A DNA stretch of 64,000 bases from positions 992,001 to 1,056,000 of the forward strand of contig NW_026782366.1 in NCBI RefSeq assembly GCF_031769215.1, read 5' to 3'. The stretch is from Ylistrum balloti. Taxonomy: Eukaryota. The notes under the pieces were generated by a model. The model searched no databases. It saw nothing but the letters and a program-made list of their open reading frames with translations, and was not told the origin of the DNA. Made by a program: the position numbers and the translations under genes. Shown piece by piece: positions 70 through 50,025 of the stretch; within the stretch, counting starts at the first letter, position 1, and every line of letters starts with the position of its first letter.

Positions 70-3000
70 GCATGCAGTTGGGGAGAGGCAGATCCCATGA
101 CAAGCTACCATCATCATTACAGATAAGTAGATCAACGGCAGTGCTTCTAACTGAAATATCGTATCCCATCTGGCACTGCGGCTGACAGAATCGCCCCCCT
201 AACCAGTAGTCACAAGCCAGTGCTCCATTATCAGGCGCTTCAGGAAGCTGACAATTCTCTGACACTTAACAAAAAACATACGATATGTCGTTAGAAGATT
301 TATGAACGATATTTCTCTATGACAAGATAGTTTTAAACAAATAATGAAATTATCAATTGTTTTTAATGTTTCATTGAGACAATGGAATAACACATGATAA
401 GCAATCGAACGTAGCATTTTCAAGTTAAAATATTCTAATGTCTGCTGCCACTTTCACATTTGTCACGCTTAAGGATGGAATAACTGATCCATCATCGTTA
501 TTGTGGAAGTGAAACTAATTAAATTAAACTCACATTCACAAAATGGTTGTTGTGTTCCCCAGTCCCATAGGCCATACGGAGGAGTTCCCTCTTGCTCACA
601 GCTGGTTATAGATGAGGAAGCATTCAGTGTGGCGCCATCTGAACACTCAAATCGACACGTAGATCCTAGACGGTTACCCGTACAGGTAACAGATGTATAT
701 GGCGTTGGATACACGTGGAAACACCTGATTTCTGTGTCATATAATGAAAACTACGTTTTGTATTTCCGCCAATGCTACATCGTATATTACTTCAAAGTAA
801 TCGAGAATAAATCTGACTATGCTATGTATTAAGATTAATTTTGTACACTGTTTGAACCATTCATCTAAAAAGGATTTATTTAGTATCGGAAAGGTTGTAA
901 TGGGAAATAACTTGCTAGTTTTGCATTTAAATGTGCATGATTTGAAAATATTTATATACCTCTGACGGTGATTTTGAAGTTGAGAGGCCTTGCGGTATTG
1001 CCAGCACTATCGGTTGCTGTATATGTTACAGTATATGTGCCAACCTCCAGAGCATCACCTTGAGAAGGGCCTGCAATCTGTACTACAGCTAAAATGTCTC
1101 CAGAGTTATCCTCCACTTCCGGGGCCTCCCAGTATACCGCTACAGTGACGTCATGGCGAGCAATATAGAAGGTCTTCGACGACGGATATCGTTTAAAACT
1201 CGGTCGCTCAATGTCTGAATATGTATACATCATACTAGATTAGATTACCTGCCTTAGTATAAATTTTCTCCGCTAAACTGCACTTGTGTTTTCGAAGCGA
1301 GGTCTAGTGGAGAGCAGAAACAGAACTAACATCATCTACTATAAAAAGGAAACGTTATGAAATACTAAGACATTTTAGAGCTAGGTTTGAAGCACGCCTG
1401 TAGATCAACAATGGAGAACAATATATTCGATACTGGTCACAATTCTTCAATCTTTTTGAACATCAAATTAACGCAAAACTGGTCAAACACAGATAGTGAT
1501 ATTCTTTGCATGCCTGAAAATATGTTCCTAAGGCAATAGGAAAAAAATGTAGGTAGGAATTTCTAATTGCACACATGTATACTACAGATGTACACACATA
1601 CAATCTACATAATATAACGCTGACGTTAAACCATTGTTACCATGATTGTATTAAAGACAATACTTGCCTACACAGTTAGGAACAGGAGCACTCCATAACT
1701 GATCAACTCCACACACCGACACTCGCCTCATGCCCACAGGTACGTCATACCCACTGGTACAAGTGAACGTAGCGATAGATCGAAACAAATTACCATTGGT
1801 GTATGTGATGCTTAGCAGTGGTGAAGGTAACAGTGGACCACAGGAATGCTCTACACAATTATATAAATCAGTTTAATATGCCAATTGAAACTGTCATTTT
1901 CTTAATAATTTACACATTCCACAACAATTTGTTTCCTTTATAGTTGCGAAACACCTAATATACGACATTTTGACAATACAATAATTTTTTAACTAGTTCA
2001 GACAAAATTCCCTTTAGAAATTAGAATACATAAATTGATTAGCAAATACGGAGATTTTACTTGAATGCTTAAGAGGCCTGACAAATTTTTATTGAACAGA
2101 TATGTGACTCTAACAAATCTTGTTGAAATGACTTTGGAAGAACGGGATGTGTTCCCTACTTTGGCAGCCAGGTTGTTGAATTGTCCATGACGACCAACGT
2201 CCCGTAGACAAGCATTCGGTATAGTTCGGTCCAATGAGTTCATGCCCTTCGTAACATCCGAATTCACAGTAAGAACCAAGCACCATGTCATCACTTCTAT
2301 GGCAGATGACATAACCGTCGGTCATCCGTTTTAGAACTGGACACCGTATCACTGGCAACAAATTGATAAAAACCATGAATTCAAGTCATTTTTTCGAAAA
2401 TCCAAAACATAAACCAACATTTGAAAATCTGGCAAACACGATATGTACCTTTCGATCAGTAGGCACTAAACTCGCTCTTTAACCCTGATAATCGGATTGG
2501 TTTTCCGGAACAGATGAGATGATATAAGAACTATTTGTTCGCAACAAGTGTTTCCCCCGAGTCTTTCCAACACCCGTGCTCTCTTGGTTTAGCTAACATT
2601 AGTCAGTATCTCAATAATTATTGTTGTGATTTGAGTTAGTTACTTTCCTCTGATATAAAACAGAATGATTGACACGCAACGTAGCAACATACCAGTGACG
2701 TATATATTAAAGTTGCATTTTGCCATGTTTCCACTCCTGTCTCTTGCGTAGAAACCAATTGTCGCGCCAGGTTCAGAAATGGGGTATCCAGAGTTACGAC
2801 TGGAGGATTTTTGAACACTGTAAATATAATTGAGAAGCGATAGGGACAAAATAGTCAGAATCCAATTTTTATTTAAGAAGTTTTTCATGTAAAAATAAAA
2901 TTTCGCGTACTTTCTAAACATCGTACAGGACATCTTGACGAGTGAAGATACAAGAACTTGTCCATCTTCGATCGACTAATAAGTTGTAAAAATAATTAAT

Positions 3001-4426
3001 TCTAACTGAAAAATGAGAGACTAAATGCTTATTTCTGAAGCAAAATGGAAGAATTTTTCACTGATGTAACAGACCAGACTATAGATATTTTCATAGATTT
3101 TATTTTCAATTTATCTTCAGCAATTCCATCTCCAAAACATAGCAACCTTAAGAGTACATATCGAATACCAGGATAAAATCAATTTAAAAAGTTGACTAAA
3201 ATTTTGAGGCAAGAGCGTAAGGTGACTTAACCTTACAATAACATTCTTGCGGATAAGCCAGTGAAATGTTACTATACTATTTTGAGTTTCAGTCAGACAA
3301 CTTGTAAAGTCACATTAAGTTAAACTTTAGACACAACTGAATTACATATGTATATTCCTGATAAATATACATAACTGTGTCGTGTCGGACGTCGACGTAA
3401 GGTGTAAATGTACACAATTTACTAAACCAGTGTTAAAGTGAAGGATACTGAATTCGATAAGGCGGAGTCTAAATATTGGACTTACCTCACGGTACCATCC
3501 GGAAAGTCCCATGCGGTAGGCGTGATCCAGTTCACCTTGGCATGAGTCTGGAAAGGGTCGCCATATACATGTTGGTCAGGTGGGCATTCAAGCTGAGGGG
3601 GAGTGATGTCTTCTGTATTTGTATTAAGAGACAGTGTAGTTATGAGTAACATCAACACAAACAACTTACACATTAAGAAAACGTACTTAGTTTTGGCACA
3701 ATGAAATTCAGTGCATTATCATATTCTGGCAAATAAGCGCAAAGATGATTTTTTGCAATGTTACATTTCAGATAGTTATTTAAAAGCAAAAGGCCACCGG
3801 AGTTAGATTATGTCCTACAGGAATATTCACAATCCATTTTTCACATATCATTCTTAACTTTGTTCCTGCATAACAGGCTTTATTAGTTATTTTCGAGGCT
3901 AATGGTATTTTTTTTTCAAAAAAAAAGCTCTTTCATTAACAAGCAGTAAAATGATTCGAGGATAGGGAAAAAAATGTAAAAAGCCAAACGATCATTAGTT
4001 TTAACAAGCTTGAAGCTGCATATAAACTAAATATGATTTTAATACCTAAACTCGCTTATTTGATTATCTATTGTAATTTATGGAGATATATTTGAGAATG
4101 TTTTTTCATACTCATTGCTGTTGTTAATATTATACAATTTTCCTCCAAATAACTATTTTTCCATAGTCAAGATACAATCTAAGAAATTTGTTATATGTTG
4201 ACGTCACTTTTCAATATCTTATGTATATCATAAAGCACATGTACGTACTGGGCTGTCTGCTTCTCTTGCTACACCGGGTAAACGTACATTTGACACCTCG
4301 GAATACTCGTCTGAAGAAGCGGCCCCACCTCCTTGATCTGGGACGAATTATAGGTAATGGATCTTCTCGACCTGTTTGTATAGAGATTCCTATTAGGATT
4401 GAAAGGGGAATATATACGCATCTCAT
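70..4426 (-). CDS. Gene A (5' part, continues beyond position 1): signal peptide, cationic propeptide, HYR-sushi-sushi-HYR-sushi-sushi; SVEP1/polydom-like extracellular protein
   Basis: Exons 4426-4249, 3612-3486, 2817-2693, 2351-2160, 1850-1668, 1214-960, 731-534, 258-70 join in frame (phases 1,2,1,1,1,1,1). All acceptors are AG; donors are GT except one GC (1667-1666). Start MRCVYIPLSILIGISIQTG is signal-peptide-like. HYR motifs DITPPQLECP..VNW..P.AWD and YARDRSGNMAKCNF. Sushi C..C..W..C patterns. The 1850-1668 exon is missing from the ORF track (EHSCGPLLPSP...LWSAPVPNCV). Confidence 0.9.
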
Positions 4427-6559
4427 AAAAACACACGATGTTTGCGTTGCTTTAAGGAGGAATAGTCGCGTTGAAAAGTGAAAACTTTCTTGATAAAACG
4501 TGATAATTGAAGTATTTAAACGAAATGAGGATCGCGTTAAAACGAAATAATTTTATTAAAACAAAACGAAACGAAACACAATATTAATAATTTGATATAA
4601 ACTTAAGATGATAAATAACTAACGCGTTTAAACGAGATCACTGTTGCGTTTTAACAAGAAAAATAATTTTGTTTTGTGTTTCAAATGGCCTTAAAATGAC
4701 TAAATGGTTATATTTCATTACTTTCCCCATGCGTTTGTTTTCAGGCAAGCGTTGTAATTCTCAAAATTATACTCTTTATAAAATTATAAATTGATACAGA
4801 CTATCAACTTTAAACTAACGCTAGCTTTGATCGGAGATAGCCGCGTTCATCACGTGACCTTATAGAGCCTCGTTTTAACCCGCCGCTTTGATATGATTTC
4901 TTATTATATATAATTATGTATGTGCACATAGACCACGACTGCACTACCCTACAACAATGAAAATAGTGTTCGTGTTTTTGTTCTTCATCATCATTTAGAA
5001 ATCATTTATGTGGGAATACATGTACCAGTAAGATAACAGAAGACACACAACTGAATAGCACATTTAAATAATTTAGAGTAGATACAGTAGAGCCAAACAA
5101 TGACTTAAATTGAATCATATATTTGTTTCGTCCTTCTAAGACTTGTCAGTGATGTTAAGATCCTAAATGTTGAAGCCTTGTGGCGACTGAGGAAAATCAA
5201 GTGACCGAAAGAAAAGTCAAAATCTAGACTGGGAGGTGCAGTCCCATAATGAAGTAAATTTCTTAATTTTCATATATCAAATCATTTTAGAACAGCGTCA
5301 AATGCACATGTATACTCTGAACCGTGCCTCTGTTCGGTTGAGTTGAAACGTGGTAGGTTACTGCAAACCTTTCTTCGCCATTTTTAGACTTTATCGTTTA
5401 TTTTCTGCTTCTTGTAACTGTTTACTTACATATTTCAAGTTCACCTGACCATTCTCCATCTTTACAATATACCCATGTTTGCCGAGAATTCTGTGTACAA
5501 GTAAATATACAAATGTGTCCGGGACTGACAACATCCTCTATAGGGGTAACACGGTTGTTTTCCTCGTCCTGGCATTTTATGTTTGTCGACGGCAAGTCGG
5601 TGGTATCACAACCTCCCTTTACTGTACCCTACAATGGATATACGGGAAATTAGATCACAAATATATACAGTATTTGTAAATGATGCTGAAATTTTCAACT
5701 ACCGAAAGGAAGATGGTATTCAAATGACAAAACAAATGAAACAAAAAGACAAATGGCGAAATAGAAACATCAGCGACATACAATGTACCAACATTGACAG
5801 ATCGGCTGTATCGTACACAAGGAATAGATCCAAATTACAAATAGAATATAGTATATAAGGATTAAATAGAACTGTCAGGAACAGTGTTCTCGTCAACTAA
5901 CATACATGTAGAATTGAATTAGTTTTCGTTAGTTATTCCGAATGGTAACTATTTAGTCCACTTTTAATATGTCAATTTATCTTATTGTAACATACCTGTA
6001 CTGTAAATATCTCCCAAAAGGCTGCTACAATCCACAGATATACGTGAAACCTTGTCATGACGGGTCTTCGAACGGGCGTCTCTGCATAGGTATGAGTGTG
6101 CAGGTGGACATAAAACTAATTGATAAAGAACTTCCGGGTACGTTGTATTTATATCTGCGTATGTACATTTGTTCAAAATAGATTACTTGTATGACTGGAA
6201 ATCACTGTAACTTGTTCATTTGGAAGTGTTTGCCCTGAATTATATGTTTACCTGCTACAAAATTGTATTCGAGGCCTAGTTTAATACAATTATCTTAGAT
6301 ACTTGATGTTCCTAATCACAAAAGTTCTACCAGTGTTTAGATAATTGTATCGTAAAAGTATGAAGTCTGAATAAACTGATGAATAAAATTATGATTATTC
6401 TATCACGAACTCATCTGAAATACAAAACTTTAAATCTGCGATTTTGTCAAATTAAACAATAAAACGTGAATGTTAATGCAAAATGGTATTTAACATGCCT
6501 CTGTACAAACGCTCTTTCTTTTATGGCCAGTTCAATGAAGATGGAATGTCTTAAGCGTT

Positions 6560-34500: not shown

Positions 34501-37500
34501 ACATGGCTTAAAAAGTGGATCAGAGTTTAGCGAGGGATATCACTCATTTGGATATACTGCTAGGGACAGACATGGTAATGCTGATACTTGTTCCACACAG
34601 TTTGAAATTAAAGGTATGTAAATATTACCACAATCTATTTAAGAAAATTATATACAACCATAAAACAACTTTTCTGTTGTGTTAAGTCTAATATGCAACT
34701 GCGTAAAAATGTTTACTTGATATATCATTATATGTAGATTTTATTTCAAAGGTAAAACGTGAATGATATCTTAATAAAACATGTACGTATCTCTGAAGAA
34801 AGAAAGAGCCAACATACTAACGAAATCTTAATTGAAACCCATAATCAATGACATATGATCAAGAGAAAGAGTTCTGCCACGGAAACTCCAGGAAAAATAC
34901 AAAGATAACACGGAGTATTCCAACCAGGTAAAATACAATGATAACACTAGGAATTCTAAACGTTTAAAATACAAGGATAACACTAGGAATACTAAACGGG
35001 TAGAATACAAGGATAACACTAGGAATTCTAAACGTTTAAAATACAAGGATAACACCAGGAATTCTAAACGGGTAAAATACAAGGATAACACTAGGAATTC
35101 TAAACGGGTAGAATACAAGGATAACACTAGGAATACTAAACGGGTAGAATACAAGGATAACACTAGGAATTCTAAACGTTTAAAATACAAGGATAACACT
35201 AGGAATTCTAAACGGGTAAAATACAAGGATAACACTAGGAATACTAAACGGGTAGAATACAAGGATAACACTAGGAATTCTAAACGTTTAAAATACAAGG
35301 ATAACACTAGGAATACTAAACGGGTAGAATACAAGGATAACACTAGCAATTCTAAACGTTTAAAATACAAGGATAACACCAGGAATTCTAAACGGGTAGA
35401 ATACAATTATAACACTAGGAATTCTAAACGTTTAAAATACAAGGATAACACTAGGAATTCTAAACGGGTAAAATACAAGGATAACACTAGGAATTCTAAA
35501 CGTTTAAAATACAAGGATAACACTAGGAATTTTAAACGTTTGACATACAAGGATAACACGAGGAATACTAAACGGGTAGAATACAAGGATAACACTAGGA
35601 ATTCTAAACGTTTAAAATACAAGGATAACACCAGGAATGCTAAACGGGTAGAATACAAGGATAACACTAGGAATTCTAAACGTTTAAAATACAAGGATAA
35701 CACTAGGAATTCTAAACGGGTAGAATACAAGGATAACACTAGGAATTCTAAACGGGTAGAATACAAGGATAACACTAGGAATTCTAAACGGGTCAAATAC
35801 AAGGATAACACTAGGAATTCTAAACGGGTAGAATACAAGGATAACACTAGGAATTCTAAACGTTTAAAATACAAGGATAACACTAGGAATTCTAAACGGG
35901 CAAACGTCTTCTGCTATATCTAAAATCATTCAGCGTATAATTTCGTTTAAACAGGAAACGCTGAGTTCTTAAAAGATGCCGATGTAAACAACAACGACAA
36001 CAACCCATGTGTACTAACCAACACACGTTTACTATTCATCAAATATATATGTACACCTACTGGAAACCCTAGTCTGTCTGAATTGTTCCTATTTAAGACC
36101 TCATCTAAGAATTATTCTTAAAGTGGTTATTTGCAAATCAGGATAGTCATATATTATGTTTTGATTTTTTGTGATACAGTGAGGCGTTGTATCAGTATGC
36201 CACCTATACCAGAAAACGGGAAAATGTCTTGTGAACCCAGCTGGTACGATCCATTGCTTGGCAGTACCTGTACATGTAACTGTAATGCAGGATACTCATT
36301 GTCAGGAAGCTCCACAAGAACGTGCCAGAATACCGAAACCTTTGACGGAACACCGGCAGTTTGCTCCAGTAGGTTTGCTGTACAATGTATATACTGCAAT
36401 AGCCTTCCGGTATATTCTCAAGATTGTTGTCACATCTTCTAAGTTTTGTAAATAATGTCCACATGCTGTGTCTGTCAGATACGTTTTTAGCTTGTAATTT
36501 TGTTTCAACTTCTTATATATAATCAATTTGGTACAATCATTAAGTGAAACTATTTTATATCAAACATTGTTTTTTATTTATCTGATTTTTACCTATTACT
36601 CCTTATATTGTATTTTTATGGAGATGTTCAGAACGTCATTTTCTTGTCCTGTTTTGAAGAAATCCAATGTCCTGACGTTCCCGACCCTGAAAACGGACAA
36701 GCGGTCTGTTTGTTTGGTAATCTCTACCAAAGTGTTTGCATGACGTCATGCCCGGTCAATCAGGGTTACGGCACCGTAGCCGTATTCATATATTGTCGTG
36801 ACGACGGAACTTGGTCGGGTAGTCTGGAGCCATGTTATGGTAAGGAACCGTGGTATCATATTAATATTATAGATTGAGATCTGATGGTTCTGTTTGTATG
36901 TTTCTTTACAATGTTTAACAAAATCAATGACTAAGGGCGTAATATATAATTCATTTCTTTATGTGCTACAATACAATACTTTCTCGTCTTAAATGAAGGT
37001 GAATTTTACAGTTCGCCAATAATGCACATTTTCTGGAAATATATAGAAGATGAGGTTGATTCATAGAAAGTCTCAATTTTGTGGGTTCAATTTTTCCTGA
37101 AGCCATCAAATTCCCTCATGGCAATAACGCAAGTGCAAAACATGTACATAATGAAACCTCATGGAGGTGTCATCTTTCTCGATGATGAAATGCGAAGCTA
37201 TATTTTTTATCTATTTTTTAATAATCTTTAATCAAGTCCGCGCCCTAATGCATAAAACAAAACAAAAATCTCGTTTTCTGAAGTTGAACAATTTTAGATC
37301 AGAATAAAAATTAGATTAGAATAAAAATAGCATATTAGCAAGAACACGCGTTATCATGAGCATTCTTTACAAAACTTACACAACGATGTAGTAGTGTATG
37401 CATATATCAAGATCGGTTGAAGGGAGATCACTCGTATTCTAGGTGCATTGAGGTTACCAGAAATTAGAATGAAATAATATTTATCTACAGACATGTTACG

Positions 37501-40500: not shown

Positions 40501-43500
40501 ATCCTAATCTAAGTAGGTAACATGTAAGTGTTACTGTTGGAAGCAATCGTTTTTCATTCGAATTACTGTAACAACCACAACAATTTCAGAGCGATATATC
40601 TCAGTCGAGGGCTAACATTCTGTAGCGAGGTCAGACACCGAGATGAATCCGTCGGAATCCGTCGGAAACATATACATGTATTAGGGTTTTTTTTTTTTTA
40701 CCAAAACCGCTAGTCTGCATATCCAAATTCTTGTTTGGACTAAATTACTCCCCTTTTCGCCTATAGGTCAGAGAGATAACTGGATATAATGACATGTTCG
40801 TTATGACATCACTAAATGTCACGTAAAAGTACCACACAGATTGGGTGAGACACAAAAATTATAACACTGAGAGCAAGAAAACCGATAAATTTCAATGACG
40901 AACTATGAAGATGAATTTTTCTTAATTCATAACTGTACACGTATTCATTCTGAATAAAAGTAATTATTTTCTTGTTTTGTTGCGAGGAAGCCCTCTTCGT
41001 TGAAATAAAATTGCCGGCAAATTGTTTTACAAAAGATCAGATGTTTCATCATTATAATCATAAGAATACAAAACACATAATAAATCATACCAATACATAC
41101 AATCATCGCAAATTGTTTAATATAATGAAGAATTATCAGTTTTGTCTTTTAACGGCAACAGAGGGATGTGCCACTGGGAAATACTTCGACTCTACGGTAG
41201 ATGATTGTGTGGTATGTCCAATTGGGACGTACCAGGACGAAAGTCACCAGACTACATGTAAACCATGTCCGTCTGACATGTCTACTAAGGAGACGAGACG
41301 GAAGAATATAACAGACTGTTTTCGTAAGTTTGTAATGGTGCACATGATAAGTAGAAATAATGCACAATGCAGTCGTTCTTAATTAATAAACATTCAAAGA
41401 AATCATATGATAAAACCTTATACATGTATCTGTTTAAAATGGTTTGGGCATTCAAGAAAATAAACCTTTTTCACGTTTCTTTTGTATGACTTGTCTTGAA
41501 AAAATAATATAGGGTGATTTTATGGAGGCAGTGGTTTTCTTAGATATGTAATTCATGTTTGTTTGAAATATCCATTTTCTTTCAACCGATTCAGATCCTC
41601 GTATACAATGCGACAAGGCAATGTATAGACCTTTAATCTATTTCATATATGTTCGTTAAGTAGTACAACATTTACTAAGTAAGCACATTACCTGTAATTC
41701 TAATTTAAGTAAATTTGGGTTACCTCTTCTATTTTTATAGCCAGGTAATTAAAATTAATATTACTCTAAAAAAATCGTTGATTTTAACTCCTTTATTTTG
41801 CTAACGTTAGTCTGAGGTAGTTTTTTGGTCCTGCTTTTGACGTGTCACTAAACGGCACTCAATGCTACTGAATATATTATTTTGACATACCATATCTGTT
41901 AGTTTACAAACATACTCAATACATCACACACAAGTTGAAAATCATGATACCTCCGATAATATACACACATGTGACCGCTAATGATAAAAATAAACCATGT
42001 TATTGGGAACACATTCCAAGTTATGGACATCAATTTGCGACAAATTAAGAATATAATGTTATAAATTACTGACGCGTTATGTTTCCAGAGGTCTGTAATG
42101 CTGGCACCTACTCAAACAACGGAGTTATTCCTTGTACCAGCTGTGCCATTGGGACGTATCAGTCGGCAAAACACAGCACTGAATGTCAACAGTGTGACGT
42201 GGCTTTAACAACCGTCAACCGAGGAGCACAGTCTTCGTCTGAATGTATCGGTAAAGATTGTTGAATGACCAGATAAGGCAAAAACAACCATATAATAAGA
42301 TCATTTTCAGGAACAAATTATCCTACTCAAAAACGTTTCAAAATACATTTGATAATTAACTAACTAATCAATTCAAAGATATAAATCGATGTATTTCAGT
42401 TCACAGGATAGACATGAATGGGTCTAACGCTGACAAGGCTCTAAATGGAATAACACAATCTTTATTTTATAGGGTTCGACTTGATATTGGGATCAACTGG
42501 AGGAAAAGTCACATTACCGAGGTTAACTTCCTCGCTGAATGCTTTCTCAATGATGTTCTGGCTTAAGTGTCCTTTCGGAAATATCACAAGGCCTGCCATT
42601 CATTTTGTAGATAATGTACCTAATGTGGACGTTTTTCAGATCACCGACTCGCATATGCTTGAAGTGTTCGGGTAATATATTTATTTAGATATTCCCTACT
42701 TTCAAATTTTCTTCAAAGATTAAAATCTGATTCCTTTACTTTTAAGAGAAAAAATGTATCTTTAAAACAAACTAAATGGGAAACTTTCTAGTCACAGCAA
42801 AAGTATTTTAATTTTGGAAGTTGTAAAAAGGTTAATGAAAAGGGTACTTGGCAAATAATCTATGAAGAATTTGTTGAAAATGGTTTCACGTTTTCATTCT
42901 GGTTAGATTAGGTCAATTAATTCACTAAATCATATTTCCAAACGTCAGTACTTTCAGTGAAAATATTGATATGCCTGCAAACCAATAACTGATGTTGAAT
43001 TTCCACTACTTCAAACATCGCATGTTAAGCCAAAGTTGTATTGAGAATGCTTTCATCTAGATTTTATGTTTAATCTGCTCATCTTTGTGTAATGCATTGG
43101 GGTTCAAATATGAGGTAGATTCTAAAGAATTATATAACTCTGTCACAGTGCTGGCCTCGGTAACTTTAATTCATTTATTTATTCAATGAAAGTATAGATT
43201 TAATTTGATCCACGGTAAATTTCTATTGTTTCTTAAACATCTTTTAGAATTAGACACAGTATTGCCAAATTATGATCGAACTGCTTTTCACAACCTTTCG
43301 CTTTCGTTTAAGACAGTGTTGCTAAGAGGCAGTTACCAACTAAGACAACTAAATTTTGTGGAATTTAAACATCATATTCCAATTACATTTTTTTTATCTG
43401 GATGCAAATTATTTTCTATGTTATCAAGATCCTCGTATTCCGTTGCTTTTGATACCTGGACACACGTAACAATGAGATGGGAAGAGACAGCCGGAATAGT

Positions 43501-46500
43501 AGACCTGCTGATTAATGGAGTCAATAAGGCGTCTGTAACTTTCACAGAGAACACAGTAACAGCTGGAACCAGTATCGAGATAACTTCACACAACGGTTAT
43601 AATGCTGGTAGGTACACTGATTACATGAGAATCGTAAAGCTTGTTAGGAAAACCAAAGATTAACATTGCATGCACCAATCTGCCACTGAAATACTCATTT
43701 TGTAATGTTTTGAACAGTATGCGTAAATAGCGAAAGGAAATATATATTATTGTTATTTTGGAGTACTTAAAATATATATTAGAAGAAATCGAACCAAACC
43801 TATATTCTGAAGAGATTGCTACATTGCAATGATTCGTAGAAACAAGGAAAATGATAAAAGGACATCCTAAATATCATCTTTTAGTTTTTAACATATCTTT
43901 TACTTAATAACGTATAAAAGTAGATTTTTCGCCGTGAATTATTTTTATTAAGATTGAAGATACTGTTTAGAGATGTTTGGTAATCATACATGTTACAGAC
44001 TGCAGGCTATCGGGGTTTTGGATGACTGATACGAAAAGAGCTGATGCTGAATTACAAGATGACTTGATCACTTGCACGTCAGATTCCACTGCTAGTGCTA
44101 TCTACAACATGGATGATATTAAACGCCAGAATGGAGTTCTCCTAGACATTCCCTCTAAATGTGACGGTAGGTATGAGATACCGATCGTAGTATTCGTTAT
44201 CGTGTGACTTTGATCTGGTGGTTACATCACATCGGTCGATATCAAGATAGTGCTTTATCTTATACACATTTAACAAAATACATCTTATTGAGATTATGGG
44301 ATATAGCTTTGCCTTTACAAAGCACTGTATAATTATAAAATAAACACAGAAGCAAGTGTGTAATGTCACATACTACAAATTACACAACTATCACAAAATT
44401 CACCCAAAGACAATATTCTAAACATGATATATTTCTGTTTGACAGACTGATATTTTACCATTACGTATGTTATTAATATATGTTTTGTTTAACTGAGACA
44501 CATCATGAACAACATGTATTATATATCAATATGTACTAAACCATTGAGGCCTACGAATACATGCCCTAATGTTCTAGATAATTGTTTAGTCACTTATCAC
44601 CTCATACCTTGTGATCCAAATGATAATTGTGTTTTTGCAGCTGTTGATGAATGCGCCAGTAATCCTTGTGGAGTTCATGAATGTGAAAATCTTTTGAACT
44701 CCTACGCTTGTTCTTGTGTTGGCGGTTACACGGGCAGCAACTGTGATACTCCGCCTGATTTCTGTCTGGATAATGCTTGTGAAAATGGAGCTGTATGTTT
44801 AAATCAAGCTTGGAACTATACATGTCAATGCCTTGGTGACTTCAAGGGAGAACTTTGCGAAGAATTGATAGGTGAAGCATTTGAGGTTAAATTTAACTTT
44901 GTCAAGTGTACTGTTTACCTTACCTTTGTCCAGTAAGGAAATATCAATTTTCTCTGAGTCAGTGAAAACGTCCTTTCTGGTGTATCTGGCTTCATTACTA
45001 ACTCGAATTTACCAAGATTTACATTGGTGTCGTCGATGAAGCAGAAGACACCTACTCCTGAGGAACACCTGGTCTTATTATCCTTGTGTTTTTTTCCCAG
45101 GAGCCCCGTGTAAATGTTTCTTTTGTTTTGTTGCATTGGATTTAGGATTATGATTATGATCTTGTTGACATGTTGCTACTTTTTACTATTTTTATTAACA
45201 AGTTCTTAATGATAATTATATCGACTGACGTGTTTATATCACAGATATTTGTAACATATTCGTGTAACGATGTAACATGTGTAACGATTGACAATATAAA
45301 CTTATGAATTAAATATAGCATGTTTAATTAAACAGTACATGGACAATGGGCTGAATGGGGAGACTGGACACCGTGTAATGCTACGTGCAATGTTGGGCAA
45401 CAAACTAGAATTCGTACCTGTTCCAATCCCCCACCAGGACCAGATGGAAATAATTGCACCGGAAATGATCAGGAGATTCAAGCATGTAATACAGAACAAT
45501 GCCCCTGTGAGTCTTGGTAAATTTTATATAACTCTTAGATAAATGAAAATTTCTAAGTTTACTAATGCGTTATTGGTACATTTGTTTATTGGTCGCTCAG
45601 TTTAGTCTCTAGGAGTAAGGCTTCACCAATTTCACTTGCGAAATGTAAACATAATAGATTGGAGATGCAAGATTATTGCTATCCAGAAATGGAAAATGCA
45701 CAATAGGGAATTCGAAACCATCACGCTTACCAAACGGCTTTATGGAAGGCTGTCCTAGTTGGTTTCGTTGTAGGAAAAGACAGAGGATAACTAATGTAGG
45801 AAAGACTGTTGTGATCTTGGTTTCAAAATCTGGCGGACATGGTCAATAAGTATCTTGTTATTTAACGACAAAACGTAAACAAAATATATCTGAACGTGAA
45901 AGCTATATCGCTAAACAGTGATATATTTGTATCAAACAGCGTGTGAACCTATCGCATTTATACTGCTGAAAGCTAGGAAGGTCATTACGGATCACTGTGA
46001 CACAGTTGATGACTACATCAGATGCAACCTAACATGTGAAGCTGGCTATGACTTCAGCAATCAGCCTTTGGACTATTATGAATGCGGAGGAAACACATCT
46101 TATGAATGGAACGGGTACCCACCAAGCTGTGGACGTAAGTGTTTGTTGTATTCCCATTTTTAATTGTGAGTACTGTATTTTGTCATTGTTTTCAAGATGG
46201 AATGAAAATAAAATCGTACAAATGAATATAATGAAGAAATAGAATAATATGTAGTCCAAGTGATGGTTACGTGAAGAATAACGCCTTTTAGTATGAAGCA
46301 TTTGGTAAACTCGTTTAAATTTGGAACAATGCGTATTGCTTATATAATTTAATTATTAAGATATAATAAATACAAAATTCAGTCTGGTGCACCTCCTCAT
46401 TTAGAATTCGACATGTCCTTCAGTCATATGACAACCTAGCTCCTTAGCATCACTTATGAGTCCTAGAAGGGCGAAACAGCTGTATGATGCAATCTAACTC

Positions 46501-49500
46501 ACGAAGTTGTTCTATATAATTCTAAATCAATATCAAAAAGTGTTACTTACTTGTGTGTTTTTGTGCAGTTTATACCGATTTATATGAGATATGTACATTT
46601 TCATCCGCCGAATTGCAGTCCATAAAAGTGAAACTGGAATATACTATTGGCTGAAACTAGTTTCCGTTTCCTTTAGGTATTAGAGGTGGCAGAAGCTTTA
46701 ATATCAAAGCCTCCGTGAGATACACTGATACGCTAACATGCGGTTCCTCAACAAATACAGCTCTAATGGCGAATGCAGGGAACGCGCCATGTGTGGTTGA
46801 CAGTACATGTAATGTCACCATTACTACGGACACTTGTCATAAAAGGAAACGCAAGAGCGCGATCGGAACGACAGTAGAGATGTCGTTCGTGTTTAATCTA
46901 GAAAAGATAGGAGATTTAAACGTCACAGCGTTCATCGAGTCGAATATCAGTGAGTTTATTTCTCAGTACATTACATGTAAACGTTCGTTACACAAAAGTT
47001 ATTTGATTGCCTTGCTGCCGTACAAACTGAAAACTTTAAATAATTATTACATGAATTTCATTCAAAAGTATATACAAACATAACCATGACTAGAAATGTT
47101 TGTTTCACTTTAAGAATTAAGATACATGTATTTTGTATTGTGGTATGTAATATTCGTTTTGCACATAAATAAAAAAGTGGTTTAAATGTGAATAATACAA
47201 TTTATCATGTTTGCTATTCGACCTAATTTAATTTTTCTATCAGTAAGCTCAGAACTGCAGGCTTACCTTGCTATACTGGAGGATTATGAAGATACAGACG
47301 ACCTAATTAACAGCACGTCCGAGGCATTTTTCAACGTAATTATCAACGGCAATACTTACACAATTGATCCCGATACCCTCGTGATTGACAGTCACACAGC
47401 CTGTGAAAACGGAAGTGTAGACTTTGATGGTGGTTGTGGTAAGTCTTGTACACTGGTTATTTTTTCACTTTGATTCTTTTATTTCGAGATAATGAATGCA
47501 TCCTTTATCATTATTTTGATAAATTTAACATAACTAGTTAGTTTTCATTTGTTTAACATTTACAAAAATACTTACATTTCAACACAATTTCAATCTCAAG
47601 ATGTATGTAATATACAAGAACAAAACGACATGACAGCTTTCGAAGTACAACGAGAATAAAGACATCATGTTCCGGAAAGGGACGCGTCTATTACTTCATC
47701 GACGACAGATATCCTATGAATCATGATTAATCTTGTTAGTAAGAAATGTTAAGTTCGGAAATGAAAACTTGTTTAACAGCAACGAAAAGCAAGGCATCGA
47801 ATTTATCCAGCTACATATCAACAGTAAACTTCTCCGTCGTCATCATCGATCTGCATGTGGAGTACGTTTATCTGCAAGTGATCGAAATTCAAACGGCCGG
47901 GTGAAGAATTTTTCAACATGCTTGAAATGGTCATGTTTATCTCAATCGGTTACAAATAACTGTTGAATTATTTCGGTCAGATTGACAATAATATTTCAGT
48001 ATCGGTGATCGATATGTCACAAATCATTTAATAGAACAACCTCTGTTAAAGAATACACTATTTAACACTGATGTAAAATGGATGGACACCATATGTCTTG
48101 TGATTGATTATCGACCCATGTCTTGTTGACATAAATGCATGCACAGAATTACTTAAAATGGTGTCAATAAACGGAAATGTGTACATTTCTTCAGGAACAT
48201 GATTATACTTTCAGTTGAATGCCCGGTCGGAACAAGACAAGATGGAGTATGGTGTGTGTTTTGCGACTTTGGCACATACCAGAATGAGTCTGGACAATCG
48301 GTGTGTAAGCAGTGTCCAACTGGTTATACGACTGAATTCGTGGGGATGATAGAGGAAGAGAATTGTTCTAGTAAGTGGTGGTCACTAAATAGCAATTAGA
48401 TACAAAAAATGTCTGATGTCATGTTTCTATAGTCTTATCGAGAAGATATTCGTATCATAAACAAAACAAAACAAAACAAAAGTGTGTGTCTTTCAACGTT
48501 GATAACTGTTCCTATTGTACACCAGCATTTAGATCATCTGCAATTTTATCATTGTCATTGAGAAAAATCTGTAGCTTCTTTGTAACTTACTTAAGTGCAA
48601 AAACAACCGGGTACTGGTAGTCCTTTAGGCTTTAAAACTGTAATGTAACATATTGTATGCCAACATTAAGGTTCCAAATTATAAAGCAATGTGTCATATA
48701 CACTAGTATGTGGTGATCAGCAAATTGAATATCTCATTTATATAAGTGTGTTTAGATATAGAGATGGAGTGTGCCATAACATATATTCCACTTCGTTTTA
48801 AAGTAACTGTCGTAACAACTACATCAGCCATATCAACAACGTCCACTACCTCATCAGTGGCTTCTGCAGTGACGTCCACAACAACGACAACCACGCCCAT
48901 AACCACGACAGCACCGTCCACAACTACGACAACCACGCCAATAACTACAACAACCACACCCACAACTATATCAACTACACCAGCTACTGTGACTACCTCA
49001 CCCGAAACTACCACGAGCACGTTGATGTCTTCAAAACAGACATCAACTACACCATCTGAAAAGACTTCAGTTACAAGAGACAGGGCTCCGAATCTGAACT
49101 ATTCCCATACGGAAGAGTCTTTGAGTAATAATTTTATAAGATTCTCGTCGCTAAATAACATTCTTTTATTAGTACGAGATACTGTTGAACAAGGATCCAT
49201 TAATGTAAAATTAGTCCTTTTAGAAACATATTTAATTTGATAGAATAAACCTTCCTTTTTGGGATTGCGTTTCCTTGTTTCTCTCGAATTTGAATAGAAA
49301 TATTGTCTTCTGTTTTTGTGTTCTGTTGTAGGTTTACCAGTTGTAGCCATTATAGGGTCACTGATTGCTGTCCTGGTGTTAATAATCGTTGCCTTGACAG
49401 GGATTTTCATGTATAGACACCGACTGTCCGTCAGGTAACAACGTCCTTAGAAATATCATCAGCATAAAGAAACCTTGCTGTGGAAGTACGATTCTCCAGA

Positions 49501-50025
49501 AACAAACAGCCTTGGAGTTTGATGTTAAATAAGCTTTCACATGCTGAATTATATATATATTATTTAATTTATTTCTGAAACACAATTGGTAACAAACACA
49601 AAAGATGAAAATCATACTGGGAACCATTAACTTTGAATCAGACATATCATATAATTAATATGAAAACATTGAACATAAATACAAGAATTTAAGTTGAATG
49701 TGATGGTCCGTTTATTTTTATCACTGCTAATATAACCTTAGCTTCTTAACCCGAAGTATCCACAAAACATGTTTAGGTCTGCATACGCCAAATAAGCAAA
49801 TATTTTATTTTGATTTCTTACAGAGCACAGCCACCGGAAACCCGACAAATTCAAGACATTCATTTGAATATTAGAATGCATTCCAATATTCCAAATACTA
49901 CTTCAGATGTCGATCAGGGATTACCTCCCCATTACCTTGCTCGTCCATTACCATCCATAGAGAAGGGAGGATTGCCATCTGCACCAATTTGTATTACGCC
50001 TACACCATATAAGTCTGATTTTTGA
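31544..50025 (+). CDS. Gene C: complete ~1599-aa type I membrane protein, SVEP1/Uninflatable-like. Order: signal peptide, degenerate sushi-like, R7, HYR, 2 sushi, HYR, 2 sushi, SEA-like with RKKR, 2 GCC2/GCC3, pentraxin/LamG-like, 2 Ca-EGF, TSP1, sushi-like, SEA-like with RKRK, GCC2/GCC3, Thr-rich stalk, TM, short tail
   Basis: Exons 31544-31621, 32664-32841, 33593-33758, 34489-34613, 36180-36368, 36660-36839, 37809-38063, 38757-38969, 39283-39465, 39619-39777, 39945-40301, 41162-41323, 42089-42250, 42473-42671, 43429-43607, 43999-44166, 44641-44871, 45336-45506, 45940-46134, 46677-46949, 47244-47438, 48215-48370, 48804-49124, 49332-49434, 49824-50025 total 4800 nt, all GT-AG with consistent phases. 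Signal MLLIFIGLLCLSGTHG; TM GLPVVAIIGSLIAVLVLIIVALTGIFMY followed by RHR. The donor at 49124 is the least certain. Confidence 0.88.
32228..32400 (-). mobile_element. Degenerate Penelope-like reverse transcriptase fragment in gene C intron 1
   Basis: A minus frame reads DGVEIKWTFGRESLENFICFANEFHVTIKFTADISGDSTVN, matching the PLE RT motif DDIF.IWTHG.E.L..F...LN.FHPTIKFT.E.S...VNF. The catalytic YxDD is disrupted. Confidence 0.75.
34890..35900 (+). repeat. 36-bp minisatellite (about 28 units) in gene C intron 4
   Basis: Unit tacaaggataacactaggaattctaaacg(ttta/ggta)(a/g)aa. Confidence 0.97.
39025..39110 (+). repeat. G-rich purine tract in gene C intron 8
   Basis: Many G3-G6 runs, with the motif ggggagagaagggtggggagggg present twice. 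Confidence 0.85.

What the first reader, a model, noticed from the sequence alone, without database searches (positions are those of the whole stretch)
70..50025. Three-gene HYR/sushi cluster: secreted and membrane paralogues with predicted convertase processing
Seen: genes A and C share the same HYR-sushi-sushi-HYR-sushi-sushi order, including a phase-2 intron at the same point in the first HYR domain. Gene B uses the same modules plus TSP1 and EGF. A and C have strongly basic segments just before the first HYR domain, and C has furin motifs inside its SEA-like domains. The paralogues are very divergent at amino-acid level. Known: HYR, sushi, TSP1 and pentraxin modules are used in adhesion and complement-like recognition. 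Inference: a lineage-specific recognition locus (innate immunity, allorecognition or gamete/matrix adhesion) that makes a membrane receptor, a soluble partner and released peptides.
Basis: partly seen in the sequence, partly recalled or inferred. Interest (0 to 1): 0.75.

Follow-up and report, generated by a model that had tools for sequence, protein, structure and literature searches.

The report
Scallop mosaic receptor gene triad
Three real neighbouring scallop genes encode two giant membrane proteins and one small secreted relative built from adhesion-type modules, probably cut by furin-type enzymes inside SEA-like domains; the family is uncharacterised (auto-named "SVEP1-like") and shows no sign of being an immune or self-recognition locus.

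Summary
The window is Ylistrum balloti contig C509, and it carries three paralogous genes.

- **Gene C (+, 31544-50025)** is identical to a RefSeq protein named "SVEP1-like".
- **Gene A (-)** has the same module order, but it runs about 10 kb off the left edge and ends in a transmembrane helix. It is therefore not a short or secreted form.
- **Gene B (-, 30729-26602)** is the only secreted member.

The shared phase-2 intron in HYR1, the basic segments and the polybasic motifs are all confirmed.

New here:
- A second A'-B'-C' triad, in the same order and orientation, lies on contig C108.
- C has one-to-one orthologues in other scallops (57-64% identity). The C-terminal half is collinear with a Mya arenaria protein.
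- R-x-K/R-R occurs only at three homologous sites in five scallop proteins.
- The first unassigned module folds as a SEA-like sandwich (pLDDT 78), with the polybasic site in the disordered beta2-beta3 loop. Predicted SCUBE models are its best shape matches.
- B and B' both stop right after beta2 of that module.

Most likely these are convertase-processed, non-covalently held adhesion receptors plus a soluble "pre-cut head". The immune or allorecognition reading has no support. No RNA run was listed, so cleavage and expression are untested.

The parts
5996..6058 (-). Gene A exon 1: start codon and signal peptide (MTRFHVYLWIVAAFWEIFTVQ), phase-0 donor
   Evidence: Sequence read. ATG at 6058-6056, donor GTATGT after 5996. 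Position matches exon 1 of C.
5430..5628 (-). Gene A exon 2: small N-terminal Cys-rich module (no Pfam match), ends in phase 1
   Evidence: Counterpart of C exon 32664-32841.
4249..4371 (-). Gene A exon 3: basic segment REDPLPIIRPRSRRWGRFFRRVFRGVKCTFTRCSKRSRQP, holding R-S-R-R (polybasic site 0)
   Evidence: Acceptor AG|GT and donor A|GTACGT, phase 1 to phase 1. Required because a direct exon 2 to exon 4 splice gives TAA. The RRWGR motif matches RVKR-WGR in the A. irradians orthologue of C.
3486..3612 (-). Gene A HYR1, first half; donor in phase 2
   Evidence: Pfam HYR positions 2-39; splice sites.
2693..2817 (-). Gene A HYR1, second half
   Evidence: Pfam HYR positions 50-81; splice sites.
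2113..2385 (-). Gene A Sushi 1 (open-frame limits)
   Evidence: Pfam Sushi E=1.2e-7.
1654..1872 (-). Gene A Sushi 2 (open-frame limits)
   Evidence: Pfam Sushi E=1.5e-6.
955..1239 (-). Gene A HYR2, single exon (open-frame limits)
   Evidence: Own-genome HYR scan, 55.1 bits at C509:992964-993215.
472..750 (-). Gene A Sushi 3 (open-frame limits)
   Evidence: Pfam Sushi weak, E=0.035. 33% identical to C Sushi 3.
47..265 (-). Gene A Sushi 4 (open-frame limits). The gene continues left of the window in L001 (minus strand): X1 9747-9959 and 9145-9510, Ephrin_rec_like 8718-9008 and 8274-8468, LamG/pentraxin-like about 6066-8024, two EGF 5104-5451, TSP1 4640-4876, Sushi 4175-4522, X2 3827-4171 (RRKR) and 1762-2019, Ephrin_rec_like 1475-1645, transmembrane helix about 428-538
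26602..26799 (-). Gene B last exon: N-terminal half of module X1 (beta1-alpha1-beta2), ending ...NVNIAC then TAA
   Evidence: Alignment with X1 of A and C; DNA. B' ends the same way.
27048..27323 (-). Gene B Sushi 2 (open-frame limits)
   Evidence: Pfam Sushi E=8e-4. 51% identical to B'.
27511..27804 (-). Gene B HYR, single exon (open-frame limits)
   Evidence: Pfam HYR E=1.4e-7, positions 1-81 of 81.
28118..28297 (-). Gene B EGF (open-frame limits)
   Evidence: Pfam EGF E=1e-10.
28377..28667 (-). Gene B Sushi 1 (open-frame limits)
   Evidence: Pfam Sushi E=4.1e-13.
30274..30616 (-). Gene B exon 2: rest of the signal peptide, truncated TSP1-like motif ([11 protein letters not shown]...) and an EGF-like Cys pattern
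   Evidence: Pfam TSP_1 and TSP1_spondin below cut-off in B. The B' counterpart reaches the TSP_1 cut-off, 22.1 against 21.6 bits. Splice sites.
30709..30729 (-). Gene B exon 1: ATG and start of the signal peptide (MGFSLFW)
30730..31543 (.). 815-bp head-to-head spacer between the start codons of B and C (candidate bidirectional promoter)
   Evidence: B' and C' are also head to head: the first recognised B' exon ends at C108:1322387 and the C' ATG is at 1323487.
31544..31621 (+). Gene C exon 1: signal peptide
   Evidence: Exact match to P0024 residues 1-26.
32664..32841 (+). Gene C exon 2: small N-terminal Cys module (no Pfam match)
33593..33758 (+). Gene C exon 3: seven-Arg stretch (33595-33615, polybasic site 0) fused to the first half of HYR1; phase-2 donor
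34489..34613 (+). Gene C HYR1, second half
36179..36368 (+). Gene C Sushi 1
   Evidence: Pfam Sushi E=7e-7.
36660..36839 (+). Gene C Sushi 2: intact phase-1/phase-1 exon absent from RefSeq isoform P0024 but present in the A. irradians orthologue
   Evidence: (71% identity).
37811..38062 (+). Gene C HYR2, single exon
   Evidence: 65.8 bits in the own-genome HYR scan.
38759..39467 (+). Gene C Sushi 3 and Sushi 4 (exons 38759-38968 and 39282-39467)
39621..40300 (+). Gene C module X1 (exons 39621-39779 and 39947-40300): SEA-like alpha/beta sandwich with RKKR at 39989-40000 and a second R-Y-A-R in the beta2-beta3 loop
   Evidence: No Pfam match. AF2 model pLDDT 78.3 with a disordered loop at residues 70-90. 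Structural matches to SEA domains and predicted SCUBE models.
41161..42252 (+). Gene C, two Ephrin_rec_like repeats (41161-41322 and 42091-42252)
   Evidence: Pfam E=1e-13 and 6e-13.
42475..44165 (+). Gene C LamG/pentraxin-like module (exons 42475-42672, 43430-43606, 43998-44165)
   Evidence: Laminin_G_3 32.7 bits, over the cut-off. Pentaxin 17.6 bits, under the cut-off.
44640..45505 (+). Gene C, two EGF (44640-44870) and TSP1 (45335-45505)
   Evidence: Pfam EGF and TSP_1 (E=3.4e-16).
45942..46136 (+). Gene C Sushi 5
   Evidence: Pfam Sushi weak.
46679..47437 (+). Gene C module X2 (exons 46679-46948 and 47246-47437) with KRKRK at 46841-46855; fold not established
   Evidence: No Pfam match. 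AF2 pLDDT only 47. Polybasic motif conserved in orthologues and in A.
48214..48369 (+). Gene C third Ephrin_rec_like repeat
   Evidence: Pfam E=1.8e-9.
48806..50025 (+). Gene C Ser/Thr-rich stalk (48806-49126), transmembrane helix (49334-49435), cytoplasmic tail with LPPHY and C-terminal KSDF (49825-50022) and stop
   Evidence: The tail motifs recur in the M. yessoensis orthologue P0023 (LPPPY, KSAF).

Best explanation
The window (Ylistrum balloti, a scallop) carries one copy of a conserved three-gene unit.

Genes A and C encode type-I transmembrane mosaic glycoproteins of about 1,500 residues. Their order is: signal peptide, small Cys module, polybasic site, HYR, two Sushi, HYR, two Sushi, X1, two Ephrin_rec_like, LamG/pentraxin-like, two EGF, TSP1, Sushi, X2, Ephrin_rec_like, mucin-like stalk, transmembrane helix, short tail.

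Gene B lies head to head with C, 815 bp between start codons. It encodes a secreted protein of roughly 430 residues (my estimate from the exon sizes). Its order is: truncated TSP1-like/EGF-like, Sushi, EGF, HYR, Sushi, and then only the first half of X1.

X1 is a SEA-like alpha/beta sandwich. Its exposed beta2-beta3 loop carries one or two furin-type sites.

Most likely mechanism (inferred, not shown):
- In the secretory pathway, proprotein convertases cut A and C after the N-terminal pro-module and inside X1 and X2.
- The pieces stay together non-covalently, as in Notch (S1 cleavage), GPR126 and mucin SEA domains.
- The HYR/Sushi 'head' can then be shed from the membrane-anchored 'stalk' by force or ligand binding.
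- B is equivalent to a ready-made, already-cut head.

The general role is cell-surface or matrix adhesion and recognition. The ligand and tissue are unknown.
For: Gene structure and paralogy:
- Exon-level Pfam hits.
- A and C exons pair collinearly at 29-51% identity.
- RefSeq protein P0024 maps exactly onto C.
- The phase-2 intron in HYR1 is identical in position in A and C.

Conservation as a unit:
- A profile of the X1 first half finds exactly six places in the 648-Mb genome. These are A, B and C here, and A', B' and C' in the same order and orientation on C108:1293982-1342119.
- B and B' are 35-52% identical over all six large coding exons, with the cysteines aligned.

Processing:
- In five full-length scallop proteins, R-x-[KR]-R occurs only at the three homologous sites. 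My rough estimate from residue frequencies is about 0.2 chance occurrences per protein.
- The sites recur in A, A' and C'.

Fold:
- The AF2 model of X1 has pLDDT 78.3 and pTM 0.72. Its topology is beta-alpha-beta, a disordered loop at residues 70-90 that holds the basic sites, then beta-alpha-beta.
- VIA-align returns several independent SEA structures among its best rows: 1ivz Z 7.9, Gpr126 371-506 Z 7.8, TMPRSS6 82-207 Z 7.6, 2e7v Z 7.0 and MUC16 SEA5 Z 6.8.
- The best shape matches in the ESM Atlas are SCUBE clusters, TM 0.58-0.59.

Precedent:
- SEA domains of Mucin-1, Notch-2 and GPR126 are cleaved in the beta2-beta3 loop and stay associated (PMC6954182).
- The SCUBE spacer before the Cys-rich repeats carries furin motifs (PMC10214685).

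B:
- It has a signal peptide.
- Its stop follows the Cys that ends beta2, in both B and B'.
- No family exons lie downstream.
Against: - No expression or protein data. No RNA run was listed, so the splice models of A and B rest on sequence and paralogue conservation only.
- Cleavage is predicted from motifs alone.
- The structural matches have Z below 8.2 and are tied with generic ferredoxin-like folds, which the tool warns is a common score range. Foldseek against PDB gave nothing below E=0.001.
- X1 has no sequence match to Pfam SEA or to any PDB chain.
- The X2 model is unreliable (pLDDT 47), and X1 and X2 are not significantly alike by profile comparison (E=0.11).
- In the A lineage, the X1 site is only G-K-R, not a furin consensus.
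- B seems dispensable in some lineages. The A. irradians C locus keeps only a relic of B's last exon. The Pecten maximus C2 locus has no B-like exon within 10 kb upstream.
Confidence: 0.6

Rival explanations
1. The polybasic loops are not cleavage sites. They act mainly as electrostatic tethers to heparan sulphate or other anionic surfaces, as shown for the basic stretch in the SCUBE1 spacer. The proteins then remain single chains.
For: The best Atlas shape matches of X1 are SCUBE models. The SCUBE review reports that a positively charged stretch in the spacer binds heparan sulphate proteoglycans and anchors SCUBE1 to the membrane (PMC10214685). Site 0 in C is a run of seven Arg and in the orthologue is RIRIRIRVRV, longer than a convertase needs.
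Against: What is conserved is the minimal R-x-K/R-R pattern, placed directly before a beta strand. Charge in general is not conserved. Twin sites flank a variable linker in X1. The two roles are not exclusive, and SCUBE1 and SCUBE3 are also thought to be cut there.
Confidence: 0.2
2. The locus is a fast-evolving innate-immune, allorecognition or gamete-recognition cluster. Diversity in the HYR/Sushi head would be selected for discriminating self, pathogens or sperm.
For: The modules (Sushi, HYR, TSP1, pentraxin-like) are used in complement-like and adhesion systems; this rests on general knowledge. Paralogues are divergent. There is lineage-specific gain and loss: an extra C2 lineage in Mizuhopecten and Pecten and decay of B in A. 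irradians. The full architecture was found only in Pectinidae.
Against: The genome holds only six family genes, in two conserved triads. C has one-to-one orthologues at 57-64% identity with collinear exons, which is ordinary divergence for scallop genera. No polymorphism, expression or infection data could be obtained. Nothing in the sequences is specific to immunity.
Confidence: 0.1
3. Gene B is a truncated duplicate without a function of its own: a decaying by-product of tandem duplication that happens still to be open.
For: B lacks everything after the first half of X1. Half a SEA-like sandwich is unlikely to fold alone. Only a relic remains next to the A. irradians orthologue of C.
Against: B and B' diverged to 35-52% identity yet keep all six large exons open, every cysteine aligned, a signal peptide in B, and a stop at the same point within one residue. 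That is not expected for a pseudogene older than the triad duplication.
Confidence: 0.1
4. The genes are simply scallop orthologues of vertebrate SVEP1 (polydom), as the RefSeq name suggests, and work as a secreted matrix ligand.
For: NCBI names P0024, P0002, P0025 and P0026 'SVEP1(-like)'. They share module types with SVEP1: Sushi, HYR, EGF, Ephrin_rec_like and pentraxin-like.
Against: There is no von Willebrand A domain, at most seven Sushi repeats, a transmembrane helix and mucin stalk, and two unassigned modules with polybasic loops. The closest non-scallop hits cover only 20-56% of the protein at 24-30% identity.
Confidence: 0.03

Closest known systems
Furin-cleaved SEA-type domains of Notch (heterodimerisation domain, S1 site) and GPR126/ADGRG6
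   Same: A ferredoxin-like beta-alpha-beta-beta-alpha-beta sandwich in the ectodomain of a membrane receptor, with a basic convertase motif in the beta2-beta3 loop. The Gpr126 ectodomain (6v55 residues 371-506) is among the best structural matches (Z 7.8; Foldseek probability 0.98). GPR126 also has a pentraxin module upstream (PMC6954182).
   Different: There is no detectable sequence similarity to SEA. Two such candidate modules occur per protein. Twin sites flank an excisable linker. No GAIN/7TM or LNR/ankyrin parts are present. Cleavage is untested here.
SCUBE1-3: 'spacer region' followed by Cys-rich (Ephrin_rec_like) repeats
   Same: X1 and X2 are each followed directly by Ephrin_rec_like repeats, as the SCUBE spacer is. 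Predicted SCUBE models are the best Atlas shape matches of X1 (TM 0.58-0.59 over 139-147 of 174 residues). The SCUBE spacer holds a basic stretch and furin motifs and is the least conserved part of the protein (PMC10214685). Likewise, X is the least conserved part here.
   Different: There is no CUB domain and no nine-EGF N-terminus. The scallop proteins are membrane-anchored and carry HYR/Sushi heads. The similarity is between predicted models only. No SCUBE sequence was available by reference for a sequence test.
SVEP1 / polydom (the RefSeq name)
   Same: It uses Sushi, HYR, EGF, Ephrin_rec_like and a pentraxin/LamG-type module.
   Different: It lacks the vWA domain and the long Sushi array. 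It has a transmembrane anchor, a mucin stalk, TSP1 and the X modules. This is a shared module set, not orthology.
Autoproteolytic SEA domains of mucins (MUC1, MUC16) and type II transmembrane serine proteases
   Same: The same fold class by structure search: 1ivz Z 7.9, TMPRSS6 Z 7.6, 2e7v Z 7.0 and 7sa9 Z 6.8. The module sits next to a Ser/Thr-rich stalk near the membrane.
   Different: The G|SVVV self-cleavage motif is absent, and a polybasic motif stands in its place.

Membership tests
SVEP1 (sushi, vWA, EGF, pentraxin protein 1) | N-terminal von Willebrand factor A domain | tested here: not met
   The Pfam scan of P0024 and of all exons gave no VWA hit.
SVEP1 (sushi, vWA, EGF, pentraxin protein 1) | Long array of about 30 Sushi repeats; secreted, with no membrane anchor | tested here: not met
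   At most seven Sushi exons in C. A transmembrane helix lies at 49334-49435, and one in A at about L001 428-538.
SVEP1 (sushi, vWA, EGF, pentraxin protein 1) | Pentraxin domain | tested here: inconclusive
   P0024:745-925 gives Laminin_G_3 at 32.7 bits (over the cut-off) and Pentaxin at 17.6 bits (under the cut-off of 25).
SEA domain (Pfam PF01390) | Sequence match to the family profile | tested here: not met
   No Pfam family at E<=0.1 for X1 or X2. No PDB chain at E<=1 with the X1 profile.
SEA domain (Pfam PF01390) | Ferredoxin-like alpha/beta sandwich (beta-alpha-beta-beta-alpha-beta) | tested here: met
   For X1 only. The AF2 model (pLDDT 78.3) has strands 8-18, 57-67 and 95-106 and helices 25-46 and 112-131. 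Five SEA structures score Z 6.8-7.9. These rows are tied with generic folds of the same class, so the support is moderate. X2 could not be judged (pLDDT 47).
SEA domain (Pfam PF01390) | Cleavage in the beta2-beta3 loop (G|SVVV autoproteolysis, or furin as in Notch and GPR126) | tested here: inconclusive
   No GSVVV motif. RKKR and RYAR lie in the disordered loop between beta2 and beta3. Actual cleavage cannot be tested with these tools.
Proprotein-convertase substrates | R-x-K/R-R motif in an exposed segment, conserved among homologues | tested here: met
   The motif is confined to three homologous sites in five scallop proteins. It is present in A, A' and C', except that the X1 site in A and A' is G-K-R. 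The X1 loop has pLDDT below 50.
Proprotein-convertase substrates | Demonstrated cleavage | not testable with these tools
   This needs protein work. No RNA or protein data were reachable.
SCUBE family | Spacer region directly followed by Cys-rich (Ephrin_rec_like) repeats | tested here: inconclusive
   The arrangement X then Ephrin_rec_like occurs twice. The shape match to predicted SCUBE models has TM 0.58-0.59. The aligned SCUBE residues are not reported, and no sequence test was possible.
SCUBE family | C-terminal CUB domain and nine N-terminal EGF repeats | tested here: not met
   No CUB hit. Only two EGF in A and C and one in B.

The most novel reading that the evidence does not exclude
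Gene B (and B') is a naturally 'pre-cut' head subunit. It ends exactly after beta2 of the SEA-like module X1, so it carries only the half-domain that convertase cleavage would leave on the shed head of A or C. It could dock by strand complementation onto the membrane-bound stalk (X1 second half, Ephrin_rec_like ... transmembrane helix) once the original head is shed. That would swap the ligand-binding head of the receptor. This would be a genetically encoded split-SEA subunit exchange, kept together with its partners in a conserved head-to-head triad.
Probability: 0.12. Interest if true: 0.75.

Novelty: new variant of a known kind. Interest (0 to 1): 0.42.

Why it matters
It gives a concrete anatomy to a set of scallop genes that databases label only "SVEP1-like".

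- They form a distinct membrane-receptor family, with two candidate convertase-cleaved modules per protein.
- The first module is SEA-like in fold and resembles the structurally undescribed SCUBE spacer. This suggests that "spacer plus Cys-rich repeats" is an old supermodule with a SEA-type core.
- The conserved triad includes a secreted paralogue that stops at the cleavage point. That offers a simple, testable model for exchangeable receptor heads.

None of this is yet tied to a biological role, so the value is as a lead for protein biochemistry, not a finished finding.

Tried and rejected
- **RNA evidence.** The look-up of sequencing runs listed no RNA run for gene B, so read laying could not be used.
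- **Word-index search with the X1 exon.** Nothing found. The Atlas feature search gave only sub-threshold rows.
- **Exhaustive representative search with the X1 exon.** Only 5 hits in 1.84 billion proteins: one annotated scallop protein, Logan fragments and one marginal cluster.
- **Region search with X1 plus Ephrin_rec_like of P0024.** Only the five scallop proteins. The SCUBE link could therefore not be tested by sequence.
- **Foldseek against PDB.** No match below E=0.001.
- **X2 structure.** The model was too poor to search with. X1 and X2 profile comparison was not significant.
- **A hidden continuation of B.** The open frame at 26343-26522 looked like the beta3 strand. However, no donor/acceptor pair keeps the frame, and no family-like exon lies anywhere in 6300-26600. 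Rejected.
- **B's stop as intron read-through at A's splice site.** Rejected: A's intron lies three residues earlier and C's is elsewhere.
- **Single-exon trees (two-EGF exon, TSP1 exon).** Only the A-type/C-type split was supported (97/96). The rest was unresolved.
- **Genomic look-ups.** Those for P0024, P0023 and P0025 were not on record.
- **PPxY and SNIPN tail motifs.** Not found in A, A' or C'.
- **Joined models left out.** A and B were searched exon by exon, by reference. Full-length analyses used database proteins only (P0024 and relatives).

Full report
**Where the window lies.** The window is G000:C509:992001-1056000 of a 648.5-Mb genome. GC is 31-40% and coding sequence sits in short exons, so it is an animal genome. 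A database protein, P0024, maps with 100% identity onto 24 plus-strand exons from 31544 to 50022. P0024 is 1,539 residues long, is named by NCBI [quoted passage not shown], and comes from a contig of 2,186,502 bases, the length of C509.

- On the minus strand, from 3612 down to 47, the order is HYR (split), Sushi, Sushi, HYR, Sushi, Sushi.
- On the plus strand, 33593-39467, the order is the same.
- The intron inside HYR1 is phase 2 in both genes. A reads ...GTG AG|GTAAGT at 3486, resuming at 2817. C reads ...ATA AC|GTAAGT at 33758, resuming at 34489.
- Both introns lie 14 residues after the conserved Trp and 23 before the conserved Ala-Arg-Asp, so the position is the same.
- The intron is also present in A', C' and the Argopecten orthologue. 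It is therefore ancestral to the family.
- HYR2 and the HYR of B are single exons.
- A and C exons are 29-51% identical.

**Gene limits need correcting.** I fetched 20 kb to the left of the window. Gene A continues there with the same downstream order as C. In L001 (window coordinate plus 10000), on the minus strand, it has:

- X1 (9747-9959 and 9145-9510)
- two Ephrin_rec_like repeats
- a LamG/pentraxin-like region
- two EGF
- TSP1
- Sushi
- X2, with RRKR
- Ephrin_rec_like
- a transmembrane helix (ISYCFVTVGMIAGIVAGTGLVITFIAILTIKR)

A is thus a full-length membrane paralogue of C, not a short or secreted one.

At the 5' ends, C starts at 31544 with a signal peptide (MLLIFIGLLCLSGTHG), followed by a small Cys module at 32664-32841. 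A has the matching exons at 6058-5996 and 5628-5430.

A's basic segment is a separate exon, 4371-4249, phase 1 to phase 1. It must be real or the gene is broken. Exon 2 ends with a single T. T plus GT from the basic exon gives Cys, whereas T plus AA from the HYR1 exon would give TAA. Its RSRR-WGRFF motif resembles RVKR-WGRIRIR in the Argopecten orthologue of C.

The RefSeq isoform of C skips an intact Sushi exon at 36660-36839, with good splice sites and phase 1 to phase 1. The orthologue has this exon at 71% identity.

**Gene B.**

- B starts at 30729 (MGFSLFW|[12 protein letters not shown]..., a signal peptide split by a small intron).
- Its second exon holds a truncated TSP1-like motif and an EGF-like Cys pattern. 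This is below the Pfam cut-off in B and just over it in B'.
- Then follow Sushi, EGF, HYR and Sushi, each with Pfam support.
- The last exon (26799-26602) is homologous to the first half of X1 in A and C.
- It ends ...NVNIAC, then TAA.
- I looked for a continuation. No splice keeps the frame, and no family-like exon lies between 6300 and 26600.
- B has no transmembrane segment. It is the one secreted member.
- The start codons of B and C face away from each other, 815 bp apart.

**The triad is a conserved unit.** A profile of the X1 first half from A, B and C finds six places in the whole genome. These are the three here and three on contig C108. I fetched 80 kb of C108 and compared it exon by exon.

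- A' is on the minus strand at 1293982-1308008.
- B' is on the minus strand at 1318802-1322387.
- C' is on the plus strand at 1326434-1342119.
- The order and orientation match the window.
- A exons hit A' best, C exons mostly hit C' best, and B exons hit only B'.
- On the two-EGF exon, the A-type/C-type split has 97/96 support. The other forks are unresolved.
- B and B' are 35-52% identical over all six large exons, with the cysteines aligned. B' ends ...NVDVICS then stop, one residue from B's end.
- The three-gene block was therefore duplicated as a whole, and B was already truncated before that.

**Other species.**

- P0002 is an Argopecten irradians protein. The assembly GCA_041381155.1 is named in PMC11829576. 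Its exons are 39-80% identical to C and collinear with it.
- P0023 (Mizuhopecten yessoensis) is 63% identical to C.
- P0025 (M. yessoensis) and P0026 (Pecten maximus) form a further C-like lineage at about 47%. This lineage has no counterpart among the six places found in Ylistrum.
- Upstream of the Argopecten orthologue there is only a relic of B's last exon. It too stops after ...NAYVMC. No other B exon is present.
- The Pecten C2 locus has no B-like exon within 10 kb upstream.
- Outside scallops, a Mya arenaria protein (P0046, 855 residues) is collinear with P0024 579-1319 at 28% identity, E=2e-69. The stalk half is therefore old within bivalves.
- The full architecture was seen only in Pectinidae.

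**The unassigned modules.**

- X1 and X2 match no Pfam family and no PDB sequence.
- A word-index search with the X1 exon was blank.
- An exhaustive search found five proteins in 1.84 billion.
- An AF2 model of X1 (P0024:462-635, with an 11-row alignment) has pLDDT 78.3 and pTM 0.72.
- The model shows strand 8-18, helix 25-46, strand 57-67, a disordered loop at 70-90, strand 95-106, helix 112-131 and short final strands.
- Foldseek against PDB gave nothing below E=0.001. The Gpr126 ectodomain ranked second, with probability 0.98.
- VIA-align over 48,161 chains gave the following among the best rows:
  - the murine MUC16-type SEA domain (1ivz, Z 7.9, rmsd 3.5, 116 aligned)
  - Gpr126 residues 371-506 (Z 7.8)
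  - TMPRSS6 residues 82-207 (Z 7.6)
  - a transmembrane-protease SEA domain (2e7v, Z 7.0)
  - MUC16 SEA5 (Z 6.8)
- These rows are tied with generic ferredoxin-like folds, and the tool warns that Z 7-8 is a common best score. I take the fold class as supported and SEA kinship as likely but not proven.
- The ESM Atlas shape search puts two SCUBE clusters first, with TM 0.58-0.59 over 139-147 of 174 residues.
- SCUBE proteins have a "spacer region" directly before three Cys-rich repeats, which are Ephrin_rec_like. That spacer has no published structure, is the least conserved part of the protein, and carries a basic heparan-sulphate-binding stretch and furin motifs (PMC10214685).
- Here X1 and X2 are each followed by Ephrin_rec_like repeats. 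X plus these repeats looks like the same supermodule.
- The X2 model was poor (pLDDT 47), and X1 and X2 are not significantly alike by profile comparison. X2 is called SEA-like only by analogy: a Cys hairpin, then a polybasic motif, then a strand.

**Polybasic sites.** In five full-length scallop proteins, R-x-[KR]-R occurs only at three homologous places.

- *Site 0, before HYR1.*
  - C has seven Arg.
  - P0002 has RVKR.
  - P0023 has RVKR plus seven Arg.
  - P0025 has RRKR.
  - P0026 has RHKR.
  - A has RSRR.
  - A' has RTKR.
  - C' has LRLKR.
- *Site 1, in the X1 loop.*
  - This is often a pair of sites flanking 10-35 variable residues.
  - C has RKKR ... RYAR.
  - P0025 has RRRR ... REKR.
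  - P0026 has RRRR ... RVKR.
  - C' has RRRR ... RRRR.
  - The Logan fragments show the same pattern.
  - A and A' have only G-K-R.
- *Site 2, in X2.*
  - C has KRKRK.
  - P0002 has RRRRR.
  - P0023 has RRRKR.
  - P0025 has RRRR.
  - P0026 has RRKR.
  - A has RRKR.
  - A' has RFKR.

In the X1 model the sites fall in the disordered loop between beta2 and beta3. This is the loop cut by autoproteolysis in Mucin-1 and by furin in Notch-2 and human GPR126, after which the halves stay associated until pulled apart (PMC6954182).

**How it most likely works.**

- *Shown:* the gene structures, the module content, the conserved triad, the conserved basic motifs, and the SEA-type fold prediction for X1.
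- *Inferred:* A and C are cut by proprotein convertases at up to three sites. They travel to the surface as non-covalent assemblies of an HYR/Sushi head and a membrane-anchored stalk. They can shed the head.

The C lineage has a short tail with LPPHY/LPPPY and a C-terminal S-x-F. These look like WW-domain and PDZ-domain ligands; this rests on my knowledge of such motifs and was not tested. B stops exactly at the end of beta2, so it resembles a head that needs no cutting. Whether it docks onto a stalk is the most novel reading, which I rate at about 0.12.

A rival is that the basic loops mainly tether the protein to anionic surfaces, as in SCUBE1. The two roles could coexist.

"Membrane receptor, soluble partner, released peptides" is a fair description of what the sequences allow. 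A is also membrane-bound. The "lineage-specific recognition locus" idea gains nothing from my tests, for three reasons:

- There are six genes in two conserved triads.
- Orthologues are ordinary one-to-one.
- There are no data on polymorphism or expression, because no RNA run was listed.

The RefSeq name is also misleading. The proteins lack the vWA domain and the long Sushi array of SVEP1, and they are membrane-anchored.

**Limits.**

- The splice models of A and B are mine, built from splice signals, frame logic and paralogue conservation. They were searched exon by exon, by reference.
- I did not build joined A or B proteins for any search or fold.
- Full-length work used database proteins only.

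**Verdict.** The genes are already annotated but mislabelled and uncharacterised. The conserved triad, the SEA-like/SCUBE-spacer-like module with convertase loops, and the secreted half-module paralogue make it a new variant of a known kind, of moderate interest.

Noticed in passing
window 4249-4371 (-); 33595-33615 (+); L007 about 4646-4882 (+); C108:1310250-1310504 (-): The segment right after polybasic site 0 always starts with W or GW but differs sharply by lineage. It is a seven-Arg run in C and an alternating RIRIRIRVRV in the Argopecten orthologue. It is amphipathic and cationic with a Cys loop in A (WGRFFRRVFRGVKCTFTRC) and A' (GWFSSVIKGVVGTIKCISSLFILC). It is a Gly/Ala-rich hydrophobic stretch ending CEIFC in C', P0025 and P0026. 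All three types resemble membrane-active peptides (cell-penetrating, antimicrobial-like, fusion-peptide-like). After cleavage it would be the new N-terminus of the head.
   Followed up: partly
window 6200-24700: The 20-kb spacer between genes A and B is about three tandem copies of a 6-7 kb unit (87-92% identical; for example 7175-8830 matches 21493-23111 and 9625-11813 matches 15915-18003). Each copy holds a 50-bp minisatellite array (10.9-11.8 kb, 17.1-18.9 kb, 23.7-24.5 kb).
   Followed up: partly
window 34859-35920 (+) and 29405-29938: Two introns hold long minisatellites that stay open in one frame. One is in the HYR1-Sushi1 intron of C, where the frame reads as KYKDNTRNSKR-type units for 354 codons. 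The other is a 45-bp unit in the intron of B after exon 2. They are intronic, not coding, according to P0024.
   Followed up: partly
window 61497-61751 (+): An exon encoding an Sgf11-type zinc finger (Pfam Sgf11, E=3e-17). This is an unrelated SAGA/ATXN7L3-like gene to the right of gene C.
   Followed up: partly
L008-L009, C108:1336697-1340057 (+): Long open frames with the look of a non-LTR retrotransposon (endonuclease and reverse-transcriptase-like text) sit in the intron of C' between X2 and the last Ephrin_rec_like exon. Not scanned against Pfam.
   Followed up: no
window 49825-50022 (+): The cytoplasmic tail of C and of its Mizuhopecten orthologue share HSNIPNT, LPP(H/P)Y and a C-terminal KS(D/A)F. 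These motifs were not found in A, A' or C'.
   Followed up: partly
L011 7157-7285 (-): In Argopecten irradians only the last exon of a B-like gene survives upstream of the C orthologue, still ending at the same Cys plus stop. The other B exons are gone.
   Followed up: yes
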